34,573 nucleotides of DNA, from the NCBI GenBank assembly GCA_013115145.1, contig JAAPAO010000378.1, forward strand, positions 1 to 34,573. Direction: 5' to 3'. The stretch comes from Perkinsus chesapeaki ATCC PRA-425. Lineage: Eukaryota > Protista > Perkinsozoa. The notes under the pieces were generated by a model that searched no databases, had not been told where the DNA came from, and saw only the letters and a program-made list of their open reading frames with translations. Position 1 is the stretch's first letter; the number at the start of each line of letters is the position of its first letter. Made by a program: the position numbers and the translations under genes. Of this stretch, positions 778 to 26,406 are shown one piece after another.

Positions 778-849
778 TCCGCGGTAGTATAGAGGTTAGT
801 ATTCCTGCCTGTCACGCAGGAGACCCGGGTTCAATTCCCGGCCGCGGAA
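778..849 (+). tRNA. tRNA-Asp(GTC)
   Basis: Full cloverleaf: acceptor TCCGCGG/CCGCGGA, D-arm GTAT-AGAGGTTA-GTAT, anticodon stem CCTGC/GCAGG with loop CT-GTC-AC, T-arm CCGGG-TTCAATT-CCCGG. Discriminator base 849 is A. Confidence 0.93.
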
Positions 850-3240
850 CTTTACTCCATGGCTAGTGTCATTTCACGGTTTCAGCAAGCGCTAACATAC
901 CATGGTCTTCGTGATAAAGGATATGACAGTGGACTAGTATCCCTCCACTGAAGTCGACTGACCAGAACCTCACTGTTACGCCTTCCTCGCTGAACTTGAA
1001 TCCTCCAATTGTATCGTACCTAATTTCATGACCAATTTGCGGGACATTGAACCAAACCCGCCTCACCAATGCCCGAGATAGAAGCCAGCCTCCTCTCCTT
1101 CATCTTTACTTGCTTCATCACCGAATCTGACTATCTGGACTGGATACGTATGCATATGTACGGGGTGCTTCCAATCCCCCTTCTCATAAATCCATTCGTT
1201 TAAATCCCCGAGATGCATTTGTGTTAGATAATCAGTAGCAGAAGTGAAAGACTTGCCGTTCACGGCGAGCTCTCCTACCTCTAACTGAGCAGCGCGGAAA
1301 TTCGAAGCTGAGAATAGTACACATAGGACTACAGCGGCAAGTAAGATCATAACTGTCGAGTTCTTCTCGGCACCGAAACGGCTTTGTTCCGCCTGCAGCC
1401 GTATGTAGCCGTAACCCCTTGAACAGTGTACCACGAACCATTTCCACAAGGGAACCACGAGTAGGATAGCAAGGACGGCAAAAAGCCAACCTAGAAAGGT
1501 GTGCGATGGGAAAGTCGGATAATAGGGGCCGAATTTGAGATGGAACTGTGGCGCTGTTGGCGAGAGATTTCTTGTGTCCGCCAAATATTTGGCAGTTGGT
1601 GGCTCGTAGCGTGGAAGTGTCGCTGATCCACTCTCTGATGAGCTAGGGATGACGCTTAAGATGTCTCCAGTGTACCAGTAGTTGTCGGGACTCTTGTGGC
1701 TGACACCAATGAACTGCGCGTGCTGATCTGAGCTATTGCACCGGACGGCGACATCGCGACGTGAACCGGGAATGAGAATGAAGGAATTGACCTTTCTTGG
1801 CCCGTCTGTTGAAGGTATACCATCAGCAGCGATGACCTGACAAAAAGACCGTCATCCACATTAGAGCGGTAGACTGTGTTGAGTAGGACGTGGCAACTCA
1901 CGCTCATTTCGCAGGCTCCCTCCGGTACAATTATGATGTTAACATGGGCGGCAACTGGTGGATGAATGAAGCGAAGTACACCCCATTCCTTCAGAGGAAC
2001 GTTAATCGTGGGAGCTGAGATCGAAATAAAACCCTTCTCCGCTGTCAGTTCGTACCGACGAGGCCATTCACGAGGTACTTAGAAAACACCCGCTCTTCAG
2101 ATTCCTTCACAGCGAGCTCCTCTGGTTTCATATAGCTCGGCGGGCCATTGACATCGCCGGCCTCGTGACTATGGAAGAGCCAGTCCACACCTGTCAACAC
2201 GGTCCACACTGAGGAGTTGAGGAGTTCACCTGACTTCAGTTTGTAACAGTGAAAGCATACATGACCCAAAACTAGGTCCTTCTCGAAAGGGAACTCGAGC
2301 TCACCATTCCTGAGGCGAGGGACGCGCGGACACTAGCTAATCCAAACCTGTCTACTTAGGGCCGATAATAAGGGCACCAGCGAGGCCTTGGCCAACTTGG
2401 ATAACTGCGGCCCCGTGGAGATGCGCATGGTACATATACGTGCCTAAAACGATAGTCCGAGATAATCGAGCGGCAGCCGTCCACACCGTGCACGTGGTCC
2501 TGAGGTACATGATAGACGTATGTGAGGTTGTCTCCAGGTTGACAGGATACCAACACGTCATCTTCTTGTGGTGATATGTGAAGACCGTGAACGTGGAGGT
2601 TAGTTGCATTCAACTAGGGCGAGCCAGTAACTCGGTGAATATTCGAGAAAGGTACCCTGCCCAAATGATTGTTCTTCCATGCACCTTGAGGCGGCGAAAG
2701 CCTATTAATGATAGTGATCCGCAGTGTGTCGCCTGGGGAAACTCGGATGGTCGGCCCCACGAGCCTCCCATTATAGACTCGGGGCTGCCAATGGTCTATA
2801 CCAACCTAACAAATACGCTAAAGGCTTGTATAGAATGGAAAGGCTACACTCTCCATCAACTCGGGATCGGCGATATCAAGAAAGAGATCCTGCTCTACTG
2901 TAGCGGCTGTGACGAATACCTGTGAGCATATCGCCGCGAGAATAGGCCATCGACATAAAGAACCGAAGAACCTCGTCAAGAGCATCCGAGATTGAAAGTA
3001 ACTATCATAGTATCATCCACGGGGTATTCCGGTCGGGAATTGGTATCGTCAACGATCGGTGGAATTGGTAAGCAATCCCTTGAACGCACGTGCAAACCCA
3101 GGTGTGCAGCGCAGACCTATACCTTAAAACCATAAGCGTCCTTGTCCATGAAGAACCGTTCTACCCTTCTTTCAACACAACAACGGGGAATGCCGACAAC
3201 TACTTACACGGCAGGGCGTCTCCATCAGTGCATTCATCAC
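833..3240. repeat. Direct segmental duplication, unit 1 (partner about 12417-14830)
   Basis: Aligns by eye from the tRNA T-loop through the whole oxidase gene. Weak residual similarity continues upstream of the start codons (e.g. AACACAACAA..CCGACAACT in both copies). Confidence 0.9.
869..2985 (-). CDS. Three-domain multicopper oxidase, copy 1 (signal peptide; internal predicted transmembrane hairpin), 9 exons, 583 aa
   Basis: ATG at 2985 (MLLTRFFGSLCRWPILAAICSQVFVTAA). GT-AG introns at 2806-2847, 2614-2655, 2444-2486, 2310-2355, 2191-2229, 2015-2055, 1837-1901 and 1020-1066 give a 1752 nt stop-free frame. Motifs: YNGRLVGPTIRVSPGD, TNLHVHG, YMYHAHLHG, VIAADG, HPVHMH, HCHILYHEDHGM. Confidence 0.92.
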
Positions 3241-12416: not shown

Positions 12417-12435
12417 AATTCCCGGCCGCGTAACT
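12417..12435 (+). pseudogene. 3' remnant of tRNA-Asp marking the start of duplication unit 2
   Basis: AATTCCCGGCCGCGTAACT versus AATTCCCGGCCGCGGAACT at 833-851 (18 of 19 identical), at a near-identical distance from the oxidase stop codon. No tRNA similarity further upstream. Confidence 0.8.
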
Positions 12436-12453
12436 CTGTACTGGCAGCATGTA

Positions 12454-14580
12454 TCATTTCACCGTTTCGGCGACTGCTATCATACCACGGTCTTCGTGAT
12501 AGAGGATGTGGCAGTGTACGAGTATGCCTCCAGTGAAGTCCACTGACCAGAATCTCACAGTCACGCCTTTCTTGCTGAAATTGAATCCTCCAATCGTATC
12601 GTACCTAATTTCATGACCAATTTGCGGGATATTGAACCAAACCCGCCTCACCAATGCCCGAGATAGAAGCCAGCTTCCTCTCCTTCATTTTTACTTGCTT
12701 CATCACCGAATCTGGCTATCTGGACTGGATACGTATGCATATGTACGGGGTGCTTCCAATCCCCCTTCTCATAAATCCATTCGTTTAAATCCCCGAGATG
12801 CATTTGTGTTAGATAATCAGTAGCAGAAGTGAAAGACTTGCCGTTCACGGCGAGCTCTCCTACCTCTAACTGAGCAGCGCGGAAATTCGAAGCTGAGAAT
12901 AGTACACATAGGACTACAGCGGCAAGTAAGATCATAACTGTCGAGTTCTTCTCGGCACCGAAACGGCTCTGTTCCGCCTGCAGCCGTATGTAGCCGTAAC
13001 CCCTTGAACAGTGTACCACGAACCATTTCCACAAAGGAACCCCGAGTAGGATAGCAAGGACGGCAAAAAGCCAACCTAGAAAGGTGTGCGATGGGAAGGT
13101 CGGATAATAGTGGCCGAATTTGAGATGGAACTGTGGCGCTGTTGGCGAGAGATTTCTTGTGTCCGCCAAATATTTGGCAGTTGGTGGCTCGTAGCGTGGA
13201 AGTCTCGCTGATCCACTCTCTGATGAGCTAGGGATGACGCTTAAGATATCTCCAGTGTACCAGTAGTTGTCGGGACTCTTGTGGCTGACACCAATGAACT
13301 GCGCGTGCTGATCTGAGCTATTGCACCGGACGGCGACATCGCGACGTGAACCGGGAATGAGAATGAAGGAATTGACCTTTCTTGGCCCGTCTGTTGAAGG
13401 TATACCATCAGCAGCGATGACCTGACAAAAAGACCGTCATCCACATTAGAGCGGTAGACTGTGTTGAGTAGGACGTGGCAACTCACGCTCATTTCGCAGG
13501 CTCCCTCCGGTACAATTGTGATGTTAACATGGGCGGCAACTGGTGGATGAATGAAGCGAAGTACACCCCATTCCTTCAGAGGAACGTTAATCGTGGGAGC
13601 TGAGATCGAAATAAAACCCTTCTCCGCTGTCAGTTCGTACCGACGAGGCCATTCACGAGGTACTTAGAAAACACCGCCTCTTCAGATTCCTTCACAGCGA
13701 GCTCCTCTGGTTCCATATAGCTCGGCGGGCCGTTGACGTCGCCGGCCTCGTGACTGTAGAACGGCCAGTCCACACCTGTCAATGGAATTCCCCTCGCGAA
13801 AGAGTCGGAGCTCACCTTGGGAGTCGGTGATGGGCTTGGGCTCTAGTTTATAACAATGGAAGCACACATGGCCTAACACTAGCCCCCTCTCGAAAGGGAA
13901 CTCCTGCTCGCCGTTCCTGAGAGAAGTGATGCGAAGTGACTAGTAACTCCGGGCTAGTCTACTTAGGGCCGATAATGAGGGCACCAGCGAGGCCCTGGCC
14001 GACCTGGATAAATGTGCTCCCGTGGAGATGCGCATGGTACATATACGTGCCTAAAACGATAGTCCGAGATAATCGAGCGGCAGCCGTCCACACCGTGCAC
14101 GTGGTCCTGAGGTACATGATAGACGTATGTGAGGTTGTCTCCAGGTTGACAGGATACCAACACGTCATCTTCTTGTGGTGATATGTGAAGACCGTGAACG
14201 TGGAGGTTAGTTGCATTCAACTAGGGCGAGCCAGTAACTCGGTGAATATTCGAGAAAGGTACCCTGCCCAAATGATTGTTCTTCCATGCACCTTGAGGCG
14301 GCGAAAGCCTATTAATGATAGTGATCCGCAGTGTGTCGCCTGGGGAAACTCGGATGGTCGGCCACACGAGCCTCTCATTATAGACTCGGGGCTGCCAATG
14401 GTCTATACCAACCTAACAAATACGCTAAAGGCTTGTATAGAATGGAAAGGCTACACTCTCCATCAACTCGGGATCGGCGATATCAAGAAAGAGATCCTGC
14501 TCTACTGTAGCGGCTGTGACGAATACCTGTGAGCATATCGCCGCGAGAATAGGCCATCGACATAAAGAACCGAAGACCAT
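12454..14580 (-). CDS. Three-domain multicopper oxidase, copy 2 (paralogue of 869-2985)
   Basis: ATG at 14580 (MVFGSLCRWPILAAICSQVFVTAA). The exon layout parallels copy 1. Motifs TNLHVHG, YHAHLHG, HPVHMH and HCHILYHEDRGM are intact, and the hydrophobic hairpin is retained. Confidence 0.9.
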
Positions 14581-15538
14581 CAATAGTCAGCCTGTGGAAG
14601 CAAGACAGACTATCATAGCAGCTTTCACGGGACTTTGTGTGTAATTGATTGATGGGATTTATAGGGATCCTCTTGCACATGCGTGCAAACCCATGCGTGC
14701 TGTGCGCAGTCTGTCAAGAGTTAGCGCTCTCGTTCGTGAGCAAAGCCTTGCATACTTCTGTTAACACAACAATGTGATATACCGACAACTTCCACACATC
14801 TACATGGCGGGATGCCTCCATAATTACATTTATGTGTCGGTTGTTGTCAATCGAAGTTGACACCTTTCTTCGGTAGATAGGTTGACCATGGTGCCCTCCA
14901 CTATGTTGGCCATGTAGGAATCACCTGAATTAAAACTATCCACGAGAAACAGCCCCTAGGCTTCACCTTCGATATCGAACACTGTATTGGGTACGTGACA
15001 TCGCTGAGCTTCAGTTACAATTTCAGCCGCCACTGGGGGCAAGGGCCTCCACTGCCCGGATAAATCTCGCCATTCCCATAGGGCGATCGGCTCTAAACAG
15101 GGTACAATGGAACATGCTTTAGATCAGCTCACTCCCGATCAGAGAAGCTTCCGCGAAATGCCCGTCACCGAAATGCCTGAGATCGAAGGGATTCCACTCG
15201 CGAGGAAACGAACGAGGAGGCTTGCCCGGGCTGCATGGAGTAATCAAGAGGAATCTGAAGAAATGCTAAATAGAAGTTGCGGCAGGCAAAAACTATTACC
15301 GAATTTGCATCATATTGATCATCGCAAGGCTCGTTGATAACCCTAAGAGAGGAGATCCCACCAGCCGTGCTAGGCAGGGGTGACATGGCGTTTCAAAGCT
15401 TCAGGCGACCGCAGCGAATGACTGAGGTAGAGCTTGCCTGAGCTGACGGCTTACCCGCTTCGATCTACAATTGTAACCGGCGTGGGCACTGGACCTGCAC
15501 CATTAACACAGGTGGTGTCCACCAGGAGTCGCAATCTA

Positions 15539-24446: not shown

Positions 24447-26406
24447 ATGTTGAGCAAGCTAGCTACACGCATCACCCGCCCCGGTGTTACTGCCGCCAGA
24501 CACGTCAGTACAACAACCATTGGTGGATATAAGGTCAGCCAAAGCATACTCCACTTTATAACAGACGTATCTTAGGTTCATGATCACTTCTATGACGCTG
24601 TTGTTGTTGGTGCTGGAGGGGCTGGTCTAAGAGCCGCTTCTGGTCTAGTGGCCCATGGCCTCAAGACTGCTTGCATTTCCAAGGTAAAGCCTAACCATAC
24701 TCATATCTCTATTCCCCATTTGTCAGGTTTTTCCAACTCGTTCTCACACTGTTGCAGCTCAAGGAGGCATCAACGCTGCCCTGGGCAACATGACCGAGGA
24801 TGACTGGCGTTGGCATGCCTATGATACCGTTAAGGGCTCTGATTGGCTTGGTGATCAAGACGCTATCGAACACATGTGCCGCCTTGCCCCCCAAGTTGTG
24901 CTAGAGCTCGAGAGCTATGGTCTGCCCTTCTCAAGGACCAAGGAGGGCAAGATCTACCAGAGGGCCTTCGGTGGCCAGAGCCTCAAGTTTGGCAAGGGAG
25001 GCCAAGCCTACAGATGTGCCGCTGCCGCTGACCGCACTGGTCATGCTATCCTTCACACTCTGTACGGTATGTCCCTGAAGTACGATTGTCTGTTCTTCAT
25101 CGAGTACTTTGCCCTCGACCTCATCATGGACAAGGACGGTTCCTGTAAGGGCGTCATCGCTATGAGCATGGAAGATGGTTCCCTCCATCGTTTCGGGGCC
25201 CACCAGACTGTCATCGCCACTGGTGGATACGGTAGAGCCTACCAGAGCTGCACTAGCGCTCATACCTGCACCGGTGACGGCGGCGGTATGGTCTCGAGGG
25301 CTGGCCTGCCCCTACAGGACTTGGAGTTCGTGCAGTTCCATCCGACTGGCATATTTCCCGCCGGTTGTCTAATGACTGAAGGTTGCCGTGGTGAAGGAGG
25401 AATCCTGAGGAACAGCGAGGGTGAGCCCTTCATGGCCCGATACGCCCCGACAGCAAAGGACTTGGCGTCCCGCGATGTGGTGTCCCGGGCGATGACTTTG
25501 GAGATCCGAGAGGGTCGCGGTGTTGGCCCGAACAAGGACCACATCTACCTTCATTTGGACCACCTTCCCGCGGAGACTCTCAGGGAGAGACTTCCCGGCA
25601 TCTCTGAAACGGCCAAGATCTTTGCTGGTGTTGATGTGACCAAGGAGCCTATCCCGGTCTTACCGACAGTCCACTATAATATGGGTGGCATCCCAACCAA
25701 TTGGAAGGCTCAGTGCCTCAACCCGACCCCCTCCGACCCCGCTAAGATCGTCCCTGGTCTGCTGGCTGCTGGTGAGGCAGGCTGCGCATCAGTTCATGGG
25801 GCTAATCGTCTGGGCGCCAACTCTCTGTTGGATCTGGTGGTCTTTGGTCGTACTGCCGCTGACACTGTGGCCGAGCTGGTGAAGCCGAACTCCCCTCAGG
25901 TGGACCTTCCTAAGGACGCTGGTGAGGCCACGATTGATCGGTTCGAGAAGATACGTAACGCCAGCGGCCCTGTGTCCACGGCTGATTTGAGGACCAAGCT
26001 GCAGAAGACAATGCAGACCAGAGCGCCGGTCTACAGGAACGGTGATGATTTGAAGAAGGGCTGTGAGGAGCTAAGAGAGATAATGAAGGAGTTCAAGGAC
26101 GTCGGAATCAAGGACCGTACTCTGGTCTGGAACACCGACCTCATCGAGACCCTCGAGCTTGAGAACCTCATCACTCAGGCGGCCCAGACGGTGATATCTG
26201 GTGAAGCTAGAAAGGAATCGAGAGGGGCGCATGCCAGGGAGGACTACCCGGAGAGAGACGATGGAAAGTGGATGAAGCATTCGCTGTCGTATCAGACCAA
26301 GCGCAACATCGAAGATGCTGACATCGCCTTGAAGTACAGAGCTGTGGTGGACCAGCCCTTGGACTCTGAGATGCATCACGTCCCTCCGGCCAAGCGTGTC
26401 TACTAG
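24447..26406 (+). CDS. SDHA: Mitochondrial succinate dehydrogenase flavoprotein subunit, 3 exons, 624 aa
   Basis: Exons 24447-24533, 24576-24683 and 24727-26406. Features: transit-peptide-like N-terminus, [10 protein letters not shown], the FAD-attachment motif [42 protein letters not shown] and the C-terminal PPAKRVY. Confidence 0.98.

What the first reader, a model, noticed from the sequence alone, without database searches (positions are those of the whole stretch)
1303..1497. Multicopper oxidase with a transmembrane hairpin inserted inside the enzyme
Seen: between the domain 2/3 linker (..LSPTAPQFHLKF) and the domain 3 AVNGKSF motif, exon 8 encodes FLGWLFAVLAILLVVPLWKWFVV, a ~24 aa polar loop, and TVMILLAAVVLCVLFSAS. 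Copy 2 keeps both helices (about 12888-13082). Established: this is where CueO-type enzymes carry the Met-rich insert, and Fet3/hephaestin-type oxidases are anchored by a single C-terminal helix. Inference: a signal peptide plus an even number of helices keeps domains 1 and 3 on the same luminal/extracellular side, so the T2/T3 cluster can still form. This would be an unusual mid-chain anchoring mode with the membrane close to the T1 substrate site. A ferroxidase/cuprous oxidase role in a parasite is plausible but untested. I do not know of a description of this architecture, but could not search.
Basis: partly seen in the sequence, partly recalled or inferred. Interest (0 to 1): 0.8.

Follow-up and report, generated by a model that had tools for sequence, protein, structure and literature searches.

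The report
Copper oxidase anchored by internal membrane hairpin
A clam parasite (Perkinsus chesapeaki) and several uncultured marine microbes make a copper-containing oxidase held in the membrane by two helices inserted in the middle of the enzyme, next to its substrate site, an anchoring design I found described nowhere.

Summary
Window 869-2985 (minus strand) is a nine-exon, 583-aa three-domain multicopper oxidase (MCO) of Perkinsus chesapeaki with all copper ligands. Exon 8 encodes, at 1303-1497, two strongly hydrophobic helices joined by a 24-aa basic loop. The segment is not an intron. Spliced cDNA contigs run unspliced into it from both sides. P. olseni and P. marinus keep the exon without any indel, and the insert evolves at dN/dS about 0.10-0.15. 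AlphaFold2 builds a hairpin of two long helices (28 and 30 residues).

The design is a family trait. About ten relatives at 28-35% identity, from Perkinsus and from uncultured marine organisms (the one contig with an informative neighbour gene is eukaryotic), carry a hairpin at the same junction. All have a hydrophobic N-terminus, a K/R-rich loop and no C-terminal tail. Most sister proteins in the same well-supported clade lack the hairpin and carry a Fet3-like C-terminal helix instead.

The insert lies where E. coli CueO has its Met-rich insert. I found no solved structure, large Atlas cluster or paper with this architecture.

The proposed in-frame splice switch (scan note s1-226100, same stretch) is not supported. 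Substrate, topology and location remain untested. Verdict: a real new variant of a known enzyme kind, of moderate interest.

The parts
869..2985 (-). MCO gene copy 1: nine exons, 583 aa. Exons 2848-2985, 2656-2805, 2487-2613, 2356-2443, 2230-2309, 2056-2190, 1902-2014, 1067-1836, 869-1019 (stop codon included).
   Evidence: Six introns are seen as joints in spliced RNA contigs. The 39-nt intron 2191-2229 is supported by loose ends of copy-2 transcripts and by the public model P0001. Intron 2806-2847 and the ATG at 2985 are predicted only.
2911..2985 (-). Predicted signal-peptide-like N-terminus (MLLTRFFGSLCRWPILAAICSQVFV...).
   Evidence: Hydrophobic stretch with a 12-residue KD maximum of 2.09. 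The open frame with an ATG is conserved in copy 2 and in P. olseni P0039. There is no RNA coverage here, and the public model P0001 uses a different first exon.
1067..1836 (-). Exon 8: end of domain 2, linker, hairpin insert, start of domain 3.
   Evidence: RNA contigs spliced at 1837-1901 and 1020-1066 continue through 1472-1834 and 1065-1408. The same 256-codon exon, without indels, occurs in P. olseni (L009:7574-8341) and P. marinus (L010:5626-6390).
1531..1545 (-). Last strand before the insert (FHLKF). It aligns with CueO ...LQLSMD.
   Evidence: Alignment A3.
1429..1497 (-). Transmembrane helix 1 (aa 391-413).
   Evidence: KD19 2.44. AF2 helix 376-403 in P0001 numbering, which runs 13 below the 583-aa numbering. 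dN/dS 0.15.
1357..1428 (-). Basic connecting loop (aa 414-437), predicted cytosolic.
   Evidence: The charge-delimited stretch between the two hydrophobic runs (aa 409-436, 28 aa) holds 5 K/R. Each 15-aa outer flank holds 1. dN/dS 0.09-0.24.
1303..1356 (-). Transmembrane helix 2 (aa 438-455).
   Evidence: KD19 2.46. AF2 helix 422-451 in P0001 numbering. dN/dS 0.05-0.14.
1246..1266 (-). AVNGKSF motif, first strand of domain 3. The Pfam Cu-oxidase_2 match starts just before it.
2578..2595 (-). Copper motif 1, HVHGLH (HxH).
   Evidence: Invariant in alignments A1 and A3.
2415..2429 (-). Copper motif 2, HAHLH (HxH).
1150..1167 (-). Copper motif 3, HPVHMH (T1 His plus two T3 His).
896..931 (-). Copper motif 4, HCHILYHEDHGM (T1 Cys and His, axial Met, T3 His). 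The protein ends 20 residues after the start of HCH, so there is no C-terminal anchor.
12454..14580 (-). MCO gene copy 2: intact, nine exons, 586 aa.
   Evidence: RNA contigs of run X1 carry copy-2 letters.
12888..13082 (-). Hairpin insert of copy 2.
   Evidence: Coordinate map from the copy alignment. It has three base differences from copy 1.

Best explanation
The segment encodes a genuine, translated, selectively maintained helical hairpin: two membrane-spanning helices joined by a short basic cytosolic loop. It is inserted at the domain 2/domain 3 junction of a secretory three-domain multicopper oxidase and serves as the enzyme's membrane anchor.

Proposed biogenesis (inferred):
- An N-terminal signal peptide brings domains 1-2 into the ER lumen.
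- Helix 1 stops transfer, and the K/R-rich loop stays in the cytosol.
- Helix 2 re-initiates translocation, so domain 3 follows into the lumen.
- The trinuclear copper cluster then forms between domains 1 and 3.

The hairpin leaves the fold where CueO carries the Met-rich lid over its T1 site. The substrate-oxidising face should therefore lie against the membrane surface (inferred).

Within one protist clade of bacterial-type MCOs, this hairpin and a Fet3-like C-terminal helix look like alternative solutions to the same tethering need.

The substrate is unknown. My best guess, about 50%, is a metal ion (Fe(II) or Cu(I)) handled at the parasite surface or in an endomembrane compartment.
For: Shown:
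- All copper ligands are intact and Pfam finds Cu-oxidase_3 and Cu-oxidase_2.
- The AF2 model has mean pLDDT 86.5. Its closest structures are Thermus laccase, CueO and Campylobacter McoC (Foldseek E 1e-33 to 1e-29).
- cDNA contigs with neighbouring introns removed stay unspliced across 1065-1408 and 1472-1834.
- The exon has identical length in P. olseni and P. marinus. In the insert, 33 of 50 synonymous sites differ against 21 of 145 non-synonymous sites, giving dN/dS 0.10-0.15.
- Hydropathy reaches 2.44 and 2.46 over 19 residues.
- AF2 builds helices 376-403 and 422-451. It builds 395-419 and 428-456 in the 29%-identical relative P0090, whose model has pLDDT 91.
- Eleven hairpin-bearing proteins were examined: P. 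chesapeaki, P0039, P0040, P0041, P0090-92, P0018/42, P0010 and P0004. All show a hydrophobic N-terminus. The nine whose loop and C-terminus the script could score (all but P0010 and the truncated P0040) have 4-10 K/R in the loop against 0-3 in each flank, and end 20 residues after HCH; read by eye, P0010 fits too.
- The hairpin proteins sit in a 17-member clade with SH-aLRT 100. Seven of its ten non-hairpin members have a C-terminal hydrophobic helix.
- The CueO Met-rich insert aligns to the same gap.
Against: - No membrane-topology or signal-peptide predictor and no experiment was available. Hydropathy and AF2 helices do not prove insertion.
- The 5' end of the mRNA is not covered by reads. 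The public annotation (P0001) uses another first exon that lacks the hydrophobic N-terminus.
- 63 nt of the insert (1409-1471) have no RNA coverage.
- I could not read model coordinates, so the position of the hairpin relative to the T1 site rests on the sequence alignment with CueO plus textbook CueO structure.
- No FTR1-type permease was seen among the ten large ORFs scanned in the window.
- Known Fe(II)- or Cu(I)-binding signatures are not recognisably present: no Met-rich stretch, and no LPR1 NxTx[DE]xHP motif.
- The tree does not resolve whether the hairpin arose once.
Confidence: 0.78

Rival explanations
1. The segment is an unrecognised in-frame intron or an annotation artefact. The mature protein would then be an ordinary soluble MCO.
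For: The 195-nt stretch is an exact multiple of three. Short introns are common in this gene: eight of 39-65 nt.
Against: Contigs that have spliced out the neighbouring introns retain 1303-1408 and 1472-1497. There are no indels across three species, and dN/dS is 0.10-0.15 with saturated synonymous sites. Hydrophobic hairpins occur at the same junction in intron-less genes from distant relatives (L001-L005). Only frame-shifting GT..AG pairs exist in the uncovered 63 nt.
Confidence: 0.02
2. The hairpin is a regulated cassette. In-frame GT (1490) ... AG (1308) sites would let the parasite switch between a membrane-bound and a soluble isoform. This is scan note s1-226100, and it would be analogous to secreted versus GPI-anchored ceruloplasmin.
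For: A GT at 1490/1489 and a YAG at 1310-1308 bracket 183 nt (61 codons) in both copies. Ceruloplasmin isoforms do arise by alternative splicing (PMC11817551).
Against: No such joint appears in either RNA run, and contigs run 18 nt and 85-100 nt into the putative intron. The donor GTTGGC has T at +3, whereas all eight real donors have A or G. The length of 183 nt is three to four times that of the gene's introns. P. olseni and P. marinus have GGC instead of GGT at the donor, and TCG-G or TCC-A at the acceptor, so the sites are not conserved. The RNA data are small contig sets that drop rare variants, so a minor isoform cannot be excluded.
Confidence: 0.05
3. The two hydrophobic helices do not cross the bilayer. 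They would act as a monotopic or re-entrant wedge, or as a hydrophobic lid over the T1 site, taking the place of the CueO Met-rich lid, for example to bind a lipophilic substrate.
For: The insertion point is the same as the CueO lid. Hydropathy alone cannot distinguish a transmembrane hairpin from an interfacial one.
Against: Each hydrophobic run is 18-30 residues across the family. AF2 gives 25-30-residue helices, long enough to span a bilayer. The connecting loop is polar, 11-60 aa long and consistently K/R-rich, as expected for a cytosolic loop. It often carries Cys next to the helix ends. The hairpin alternates with a C-terminal TM anchor in sister proteins.
Confidence: 0.1
4. There is no signal peptide. 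The catalytic domains would be cytosolic and only the short loop luminal.
For: The public model P0001 lacks a hydrophobic N-terminus. No reads cover the 5' end.
Against: An in-exon ATG followed by a hydrophobic stretch is conserved in copy 1, copy 2 and P. olseni. All environmental hairpin relatives start with a hydrophobic helix. The K/R-rich loop argues for a cytosolic loop. By textbook knowledge, not tested here, eukaryotic MCOs are copper-loaded in the secretory pathway.
Confidence: 0.05

Closest known systems
E. coli CueO (periplasmic cuprous oxidase) and Thermus thermophilus laccase Tth-MCO (PDB 1kv7, 2xu9)
   Same: Closest solved structures by sequence and fold (phmmer E 5e-27; Foldseek E 1e-33 to 1e-29). 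Both have a three-cupredoxin layout, the same four copper motifs and an axial Met. CueO carries a lineage-specific insert in exactly the same gap between the last domain-2/linker strand and the xINGxxF strand.
   Different: The CueO insert is Met-rich, soluble and copper-binding. The insert here has at most two Met and consists of two hydrophobic helices plus a basic loop. CueO and Tth-MCO are soluble bacterial proteins. This one is eukaryotic, intron-containing and predicted to be membrane-integral.
Fet3p, hephaestin and zyklopen membrane ferroxidases
   Same: Multicopper oxidases tethered to a membrane with the catalytic domains on the extracytosolic side (PMC11817551). Sister proteins in the same protist clade use the same single C-terminal helix.
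   Different: These are anchored by one C-terminal TM helix plus a cytoplasmic tail. The Perkinsus protein ends 20 residues after the start of HCH and is anchored mid-chain by two helices. It belongs to the bacterial-type branch, not the fungal Fet3/laccase branch. Ferroxidase residues were not demonstrated.
GPI-anchored versus secreted ceruloplasmin
   Same: An MCO whose membrane attachment could in principle be toggled by splicing (PMC11817551).
   Different: No evidence for such a switch here. The candidate splice sites are weak, not conserved and unused in the available RNA.
Arabidopsis LPR1 and bacterial CotA-type ferroxidases
   Same: Examples of bacterial-type MCOs living in eukaryotes (PMC9168544).
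   Different: The LPR1 signature NxTx[DEG]xHP is not matched, since the sequence here reads EKGDWKHP. LPR1 has no membrane hairpin.

Membership tests
Three-domain multicopper oxidase (Pfam Cu-oxidase_3 PF07732 / Cu-oxidase_2 PF07731) | Four copper-binding motifs: HxH, HxH, HxxHxH, HCHxxxHxxxxM | tested here: met
   HVHGLH, HAHLH, HPVHMH and HCHILYHEDHGM are present. The ligand His and Cys are invariant in alignments A1 and A3.
Three-domain multicopper oxidase (Pfam Cu-oxidase_3 PF07732 / Cu-oxidase_2 PF07731) | Profile matches to the N- and C-terminal cupredoxin domains | tested here: met
   Exon pieces hit PF07732 (23.9 bits, cutoff 21) and PF07731 (25.2 bits, cutoff 20.4). The whole protein carries both precomputed domains.
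Three-domain multicopper oxidase (Pfam Cu-oxidase_3 PF07732 / Cu-oxidase_2 PF07731) | Three-cupredoxin fold | tested here: met
   AF2 pLDDT 86.5, pTM 0.86. Foldseek against PDB gives Tth laccase E 7e-33 with TM by target 0.78, and CueO E 2e-29.
Three-domain multicopper oxidase (Pfam Cu-oxidase_3 PF07732 / Cu-oxidase_2 PF07731) | Copper-dependent oxidase activity with O2 reduction to water | not testable with these tools
   Needs purified protein and assays.
Helical-hairpin integral membrane anchor | Two hydrophobic segments of membrane-spanning length separated by a short polar loop | tested here: met
   23 and 18 residues with KD19 2.44 and 2.46. AF2 helices of 28 and 30 residues. The same holds in ten relatives.
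Helical-hairpin integral membrane anchor | Positive-inside charge bias of the loop | tested here: met
   The stretch between the two charge-free hydrophobic runs holds 5 K/R, against 1 and 1 in the 15-aa outer flanks. Across the family the figures are 4-10 against 0-3.
Helical-hairpin integral membrane anchor | Demonstrated membrane integration and topology | not testable with these tools
   No TM or signal-peptide predictor and no experiment was available.
Fet3/hephaestin-type membrane ferroxidase | Single C-terminal transmembrane helix after domain 3 | tested here: not met
   The protein ends 20 residues after the start of HCH, with no hydrophobic tail.
Fet3/hephaestin-type membrane ferroxidase | Acidic Fe(II)-binding residues near T1 (Fet3p E185, D283, D409) | not tested
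   No Fet3 sequence was available for alignment. An Asp three residues before the T1 His (GDWKHP) is conserved only within Perkinsus.
Fet3/hephaestin-type membrane ferroxidase | Partner FTR1-type permease | tested here: inconclusive
   None among the ten ORFs of 108 aa or more scanned in the window. The rest of the genome could not be searched.
CueO-type cuprous oxidase | Met-rich copper-binding insert at the domain 2/3 junction | tested here: not met
   The insertion point is the same, but the insert has one Met in P. chesapeaki and is hydrophobic and basic, not Met/His-rich.
LPR1-type bacterial ferroxidase | Third acidic-triad motif NxTx[DEG]xHP before the T1 His | tested here: not met
   The motif is taken from PMC9168544. 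The sequence here reads EKGDWKHP.

The most novel reading that the evidence does not exclude
The hairpin is more than a tether. Because it emerges at the T1 substrate site, the two helices, perhaps as an oligomer or together with a partner permease, could form part of a membrane path. That path would take the oxidised metal (Fe3+ or Cu2+) straight from the catalytic site across or into the bilayer, or let the enzyme oxidise a membrane-soluble substrate. This would be an oxidase-permease coupling built into one polypeptide, an alternative to the two-protein Fet3-Ftr1 system.
Probability: 0.08. Interest if true: 0.85.

Novelty: new variant of a known kind. Interest (0 to 1): 0.55.

Why it matters
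Multicopper oxidases are among the best-studied redox enzymes. Their known membrane attachments are a C-terminal helix (Fet3, hephaestin, zyklopen) and a GPI anchor (PMC11817551); from memory, a bacterial lipid anchor (MmcO) also exists. A conserved two-helix hairpin threaded through the middle of the fold is a different topological solution. It requires half the enzyme to be translocated, then a stop, then a restart, before the copper cluster can assemble across domains 1 and 3. If the alignment-based inference is right, it also turns the substrate site toward the membrane rather than away from it. This bears on how metal oxidation is coupled to transport in protists that lack a described Fet3/Ftr1 system.

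The same clade holds both hairpin and C-terminal-helix versions, which offers a natural experiment on anchor exchange. For Perkinsus, a commercially important pathogen of oysters and clams, it marks a surface-exposed, parasite-specific metallo-enzyme pair whose role in iron or copper handling can now be tested. It does not change what is known about MCO chemistry.

Tried and rejected
- In-frame intron or artefact: rejected on RNA contigs, lack of indels and dN/dS.
- Alternative-splice cassette (note s1-226100): the sites are real in P. chesapeaki but weak, not conserved and unused.
- A permease partner in the window: Pfam scan of ten large ORFs gave only SDHA and a weak peptidase S28 hit.
- Taxonomic naming of the environmental homologues: cluster look-ups gave no names. 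Contigs come from TARA metagenomes, JGI samples 3300017486 and 3300018846, and one Logan run. Only L005 could be shown to be eukaryotic, through a neighbouring RPN2 gene. L001 neighbours had no Pfam hits. No dinoflagellate spliced leader was obvious at the 5' ends of L006 and L007.
- Profile search with alignment A1 returned mostly bacterial MCOs without the hairpin.
- ESM Atlas feature and shape searches and AFDB clusters gave only ordinary MCOs. No hit aligned more than 475 of the 570 residues in the Atlas.
- Six literature searches and reads of four papers found no MCO with an internal TM hairpin and nothing on Perkinsus MCOs or iron uptake.
- Single origin of the hairpin: the quick tree leaves the backbone of the 17-member clade unresolved. 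It needs 3 changes, and 1 is not excluded.
- Geometry of the hairpin relative to T1 could not be measured, because model coordinates are not exposed to scripts.
Full report
**What is there.** The window comes from Perkinsus chesapeaki. The gene's public protein model is FOL47_006677, P0001.

On the minus strand, 869-2985 encodes a multicopper oxidase (MCO). Two small public cDNA-type runs gave contigs that join 1019^1067, 1836^1902, 2014^2056, 2309^2356, 2443^2487 and 2613^2656, all with GT..AG on the minus strand. Loose ends of copy-2-type contigs also support a 39-40-nt intron at 2191-2229. With one further predicted intron (2806-2847) and the ATG at 2985, the model has nine exons and 583 aa.

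The protein carries HVHGLH, HAHLH, HPVHMH and HCHILYHEDHGM, which is every T1 and T2/T3 ligand plus the axial Met. It also hits Pfam Cu-oxidase_3 and Cu-oxidase_2.

**The observation.** Exon 8 (1067-1836) reads ...PQFHLKFGPYYPTFPSHT, then the following:
- helix 1, FLGWLFAVLAILLVVPLWKWFVV (1429-1497);
- the loop, HCSRGYGYIRLQAEQSRFGAEKNS (1357-1428);
- helix 2, TVMILLAAVVLCVLFSAS (1303-1356);
- then NFRAAQLEVGELAVNGKSF....

Both hydrophobic stretches reach Kyte-Doolittle means of 2.44 and 2.46 over 19 residues. Nothing else inside the protein exceeds 1.51.

Copy 2 is an intact 586-aa gene at 12454-14580. It has the same insert at 12888-13082 with three base changes, one of them Val to Gly.

**Is it coding?** Three independent lines say yes.

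- *RNA.* Contigs that have already lost the flanking introns run unspliced over 1065-1393, 1147-1408 and 1472-1834. No joint and no loose end occurs at 1303, 1497, 1308 or 1490. The letters of run X1 match copy 2 and those of X2 match copy 1, so both copies are transcribed.
- *The coverage gap.* A 63-nt stretch (1409-1471) has no coverage. It contains the two copy-specific variants at 1450 and 1457, so a break in the assembly graph is a plausible cause. The only GT..AG pairs inside it are 38 and 41 nt, would shift the frame, and end in AAG.
- *Comparative sequence.* P. olseni (L009:7574-8341) and P. marinus (L010:5626-6390) have the same 256-codon exon with no indel. In the insert, 33 of 50 synonymous sites differ between P. 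chesapeaki and P. olseni, against 21 of 145 non-synonymous sites. dN/dS is 0.10-0.15, close to the flanking enzyme domains.
- *Distant relatives.* Some relatives encoded by intron-less genes carry the same kind of insert (see below).

**Structure.** AlphaFold2 on a 58-sequence alignment gives mean pLDDT 86.5 and pTM 0.86. It builds three cupredoxin domains and, at the insert, helices 376-403, 406-415 and 422-451 in P0001 numbering. In that numbering, block-mean pLDDT is about 76-86 over residues 371-400 and 421-450, and falls to 63 and 52 over 401-420, the end of helix 1 and the loop.

A second model of the 29%-identical environmental relative P0090 has pLDDT 91.1. It gives an N-terminal helix (3-14) and hairpin helices 395-419 and 428-456.

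The nearest solved structures are Thermus thermophilus laccase, E. coli CueO and Campylobacter McoC.

I fetched E. coli cueO (L008) and aligned it with the family. Its Met-rich insert fills the same gap, between the strand aligned with FHLKF and the xINGxxF strand.

**A family trait.** An exhaustive HMMER search of 1.84 billion cluster representatives with exon 8 found only 38 hits at E up to 0.001. The few that align across the insert all have two hydrophobic helices there. With further searches, the hairpin set is:
- P. chesapeaki, two copies;
- P. olseni, P0039 and P0040;
- P. marinus, fragment P0043;
- environmental proteins P0041/P0003, P0090, P0091, P0092, P0018/P0042, P0010 and P0004.

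P0004 lies on TARA Oceans metagenome scaffolds. P0010 is an intron-less gene next to a proteasome RPN2 gene, so it is eukaryotic. The taxa of the environmental sequences could not be named.

The sequence of the insert is not conserved between subfamilies, but its character is. Hydrophobic runs are 15-38 residues (18-30 in most). The loop is 11-60 residues with 4-10 K/R, against 0-3 in each 15-residue outer flank, and Cys residues often sit at the helix-loop borders. Every member has a hydrophobic N-terminus. The chain ends 20 residues after the start of HCH wherever the C-terminus was scored.

**Anchor alternation.** I built a tree that excluded the insert columns. The hairpin proteins fall in a 17-member clade with SH-aLRT 100, nested among bacterial MCOs. 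Of the ten other members of that clade, seven have a hydrophobic helix after the HCH motif, as Fet3 does: P0005, P0006, P0017, P0021, P0030, P0034 and P0035. No hairpin protein has one.

These are related sequences, so this is a pattern, not a statistical test. The backbone of the clade is unresolved, so one origin of the hairpin is neither shown nor excluded.

**How it most likely works.** *Shown:* the protein is an intact MCO with a translated, conserved pair of membrane-length helices and a basic loop at the domain 2/3 junction.

*Inferred:*
- The signal peptide brings domains 1-2 into the lumen. Helix 1 stops transfer and the loop stays cytosolic, following the positive-inside rule. Helix 2 restarts translocation, so domain 3 joins domain 1 to form the trinuclear cluster.
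- The hairpin is the membrane anchor, replacing the C-terminal helix of sister proteins.
- Because the insertion point is that of the CueO lid over T1, the substrate site faces the membrane.

*Guess:* the substrate is a metal ion. Fe(II)- and Cu(I)-binding signatures of Fet3, CueO and LPR1 are not recognisable, and no permease gene lies in the window.

**Rivals.**
- *Intron or artefact:* essentially excluded.
- *Splice-controlled cassette (note s1-226100, same stretch):* the GT at 1490 and the AG at 1308 exist in both copies. However, the donor is atypical (GTTGGC). The 183-nt length is three to four times that of the gene's introns. Both sites are lost in P. olseni and P. marinus. No such junction is seen in RNA. 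A rare isoform cannot be excluded with these small data sets.
- *Non-spanning wedge or lid, or a cytosolic orientation:* both remain possible at low probability.

**Novelty.** No solved structure, AFDB cluster representative or large ESM Atlas cluster matched the hairpin region. Six full-text searches found no description of an MCO with an internal transmembrane hairpin. A 2025 review lists only C-terminal-helix and GPI anchoring for eukaryotic ferroxidases (PMC11817551).

I rate this a new variant of a known kind. It is real, conserved and undescribed as far as I could search, but its biochemical meaning is still open.

Noticed in passing
window 833-2969 versus 12417-14576: The two MCO copies diverge in a mosaic pattern. 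The hairpin exon differs at 10 of 770 nt and exon 3 at 0 of 127 nt, whereas 2198-2306 and 878-1010 differ by roughly 15-25%. Copy 2 has a 21-nt in-frame extra (EPKPITDSQ), which P. olseni also has. The pattern suggests gene conversion, or strong homogenisation of the hairpin exon.
   Followed up: partly
window 778-850 (+) and 12417-12436: A tRNA-Asp(GTC) gene lies 18 nt beyond the stop codon of copy 1. A remnant of about 20 nt of its 3' end (GAATTCCCGGCCGCGTAAC) lies at the matching place beside copy 2. The duplication breakpoint therefore falls inside a tRNA gene.
   Followed up: partly
window 2848-3160 (-): The public protein model FOL47_006677 (P0001) starts in an upstream exon (MDKDAYGFKV) and skips the hydrophobic N-terminus. 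An in-exon ATG (2985 in copy 1, 14580 in copy 2) gives a signal-peptide-like start, as in P. olseni and the environmental relatives. No reads cover the 5' end.
   Followed up: partly
proteins P0005, P0030, P0034 (alignment A3): The C-terminally anchored sister proteins read HCHxxxHEDxGCM. That places a Cys at the position where the T1 axial Met is expected, followed by a Met.
   Followed up: no
window 24790-26406 (+): A single 538-aa ORF matches the succinate dehydrogenase/fumarate reductase flavoprotein (PF00890 E 2e-95, PF02910 E 3e-43).
   Followed up: no
P0045 (P. olseni) and window about 14850-15050 (-): One P. olseni annotation fuses an RSN1_7TM/OSCA-like membrane protein to the MCO N-terminus, probably a merge of neighbouring genes. 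Similar sequence lies upstream of copy 2, which suggests copy 2 occupies the ancestral, syntenic position.
   Followed up: partly
L001 (TARA/ENA contig k119_456011, 9.5 kb): The contig carrying the hairpin homologue P0004 has about seven other called genes, none with a Pfam hit on record. Three that I rescanned also had none. Its organism is unknown.
   Followed up: partly
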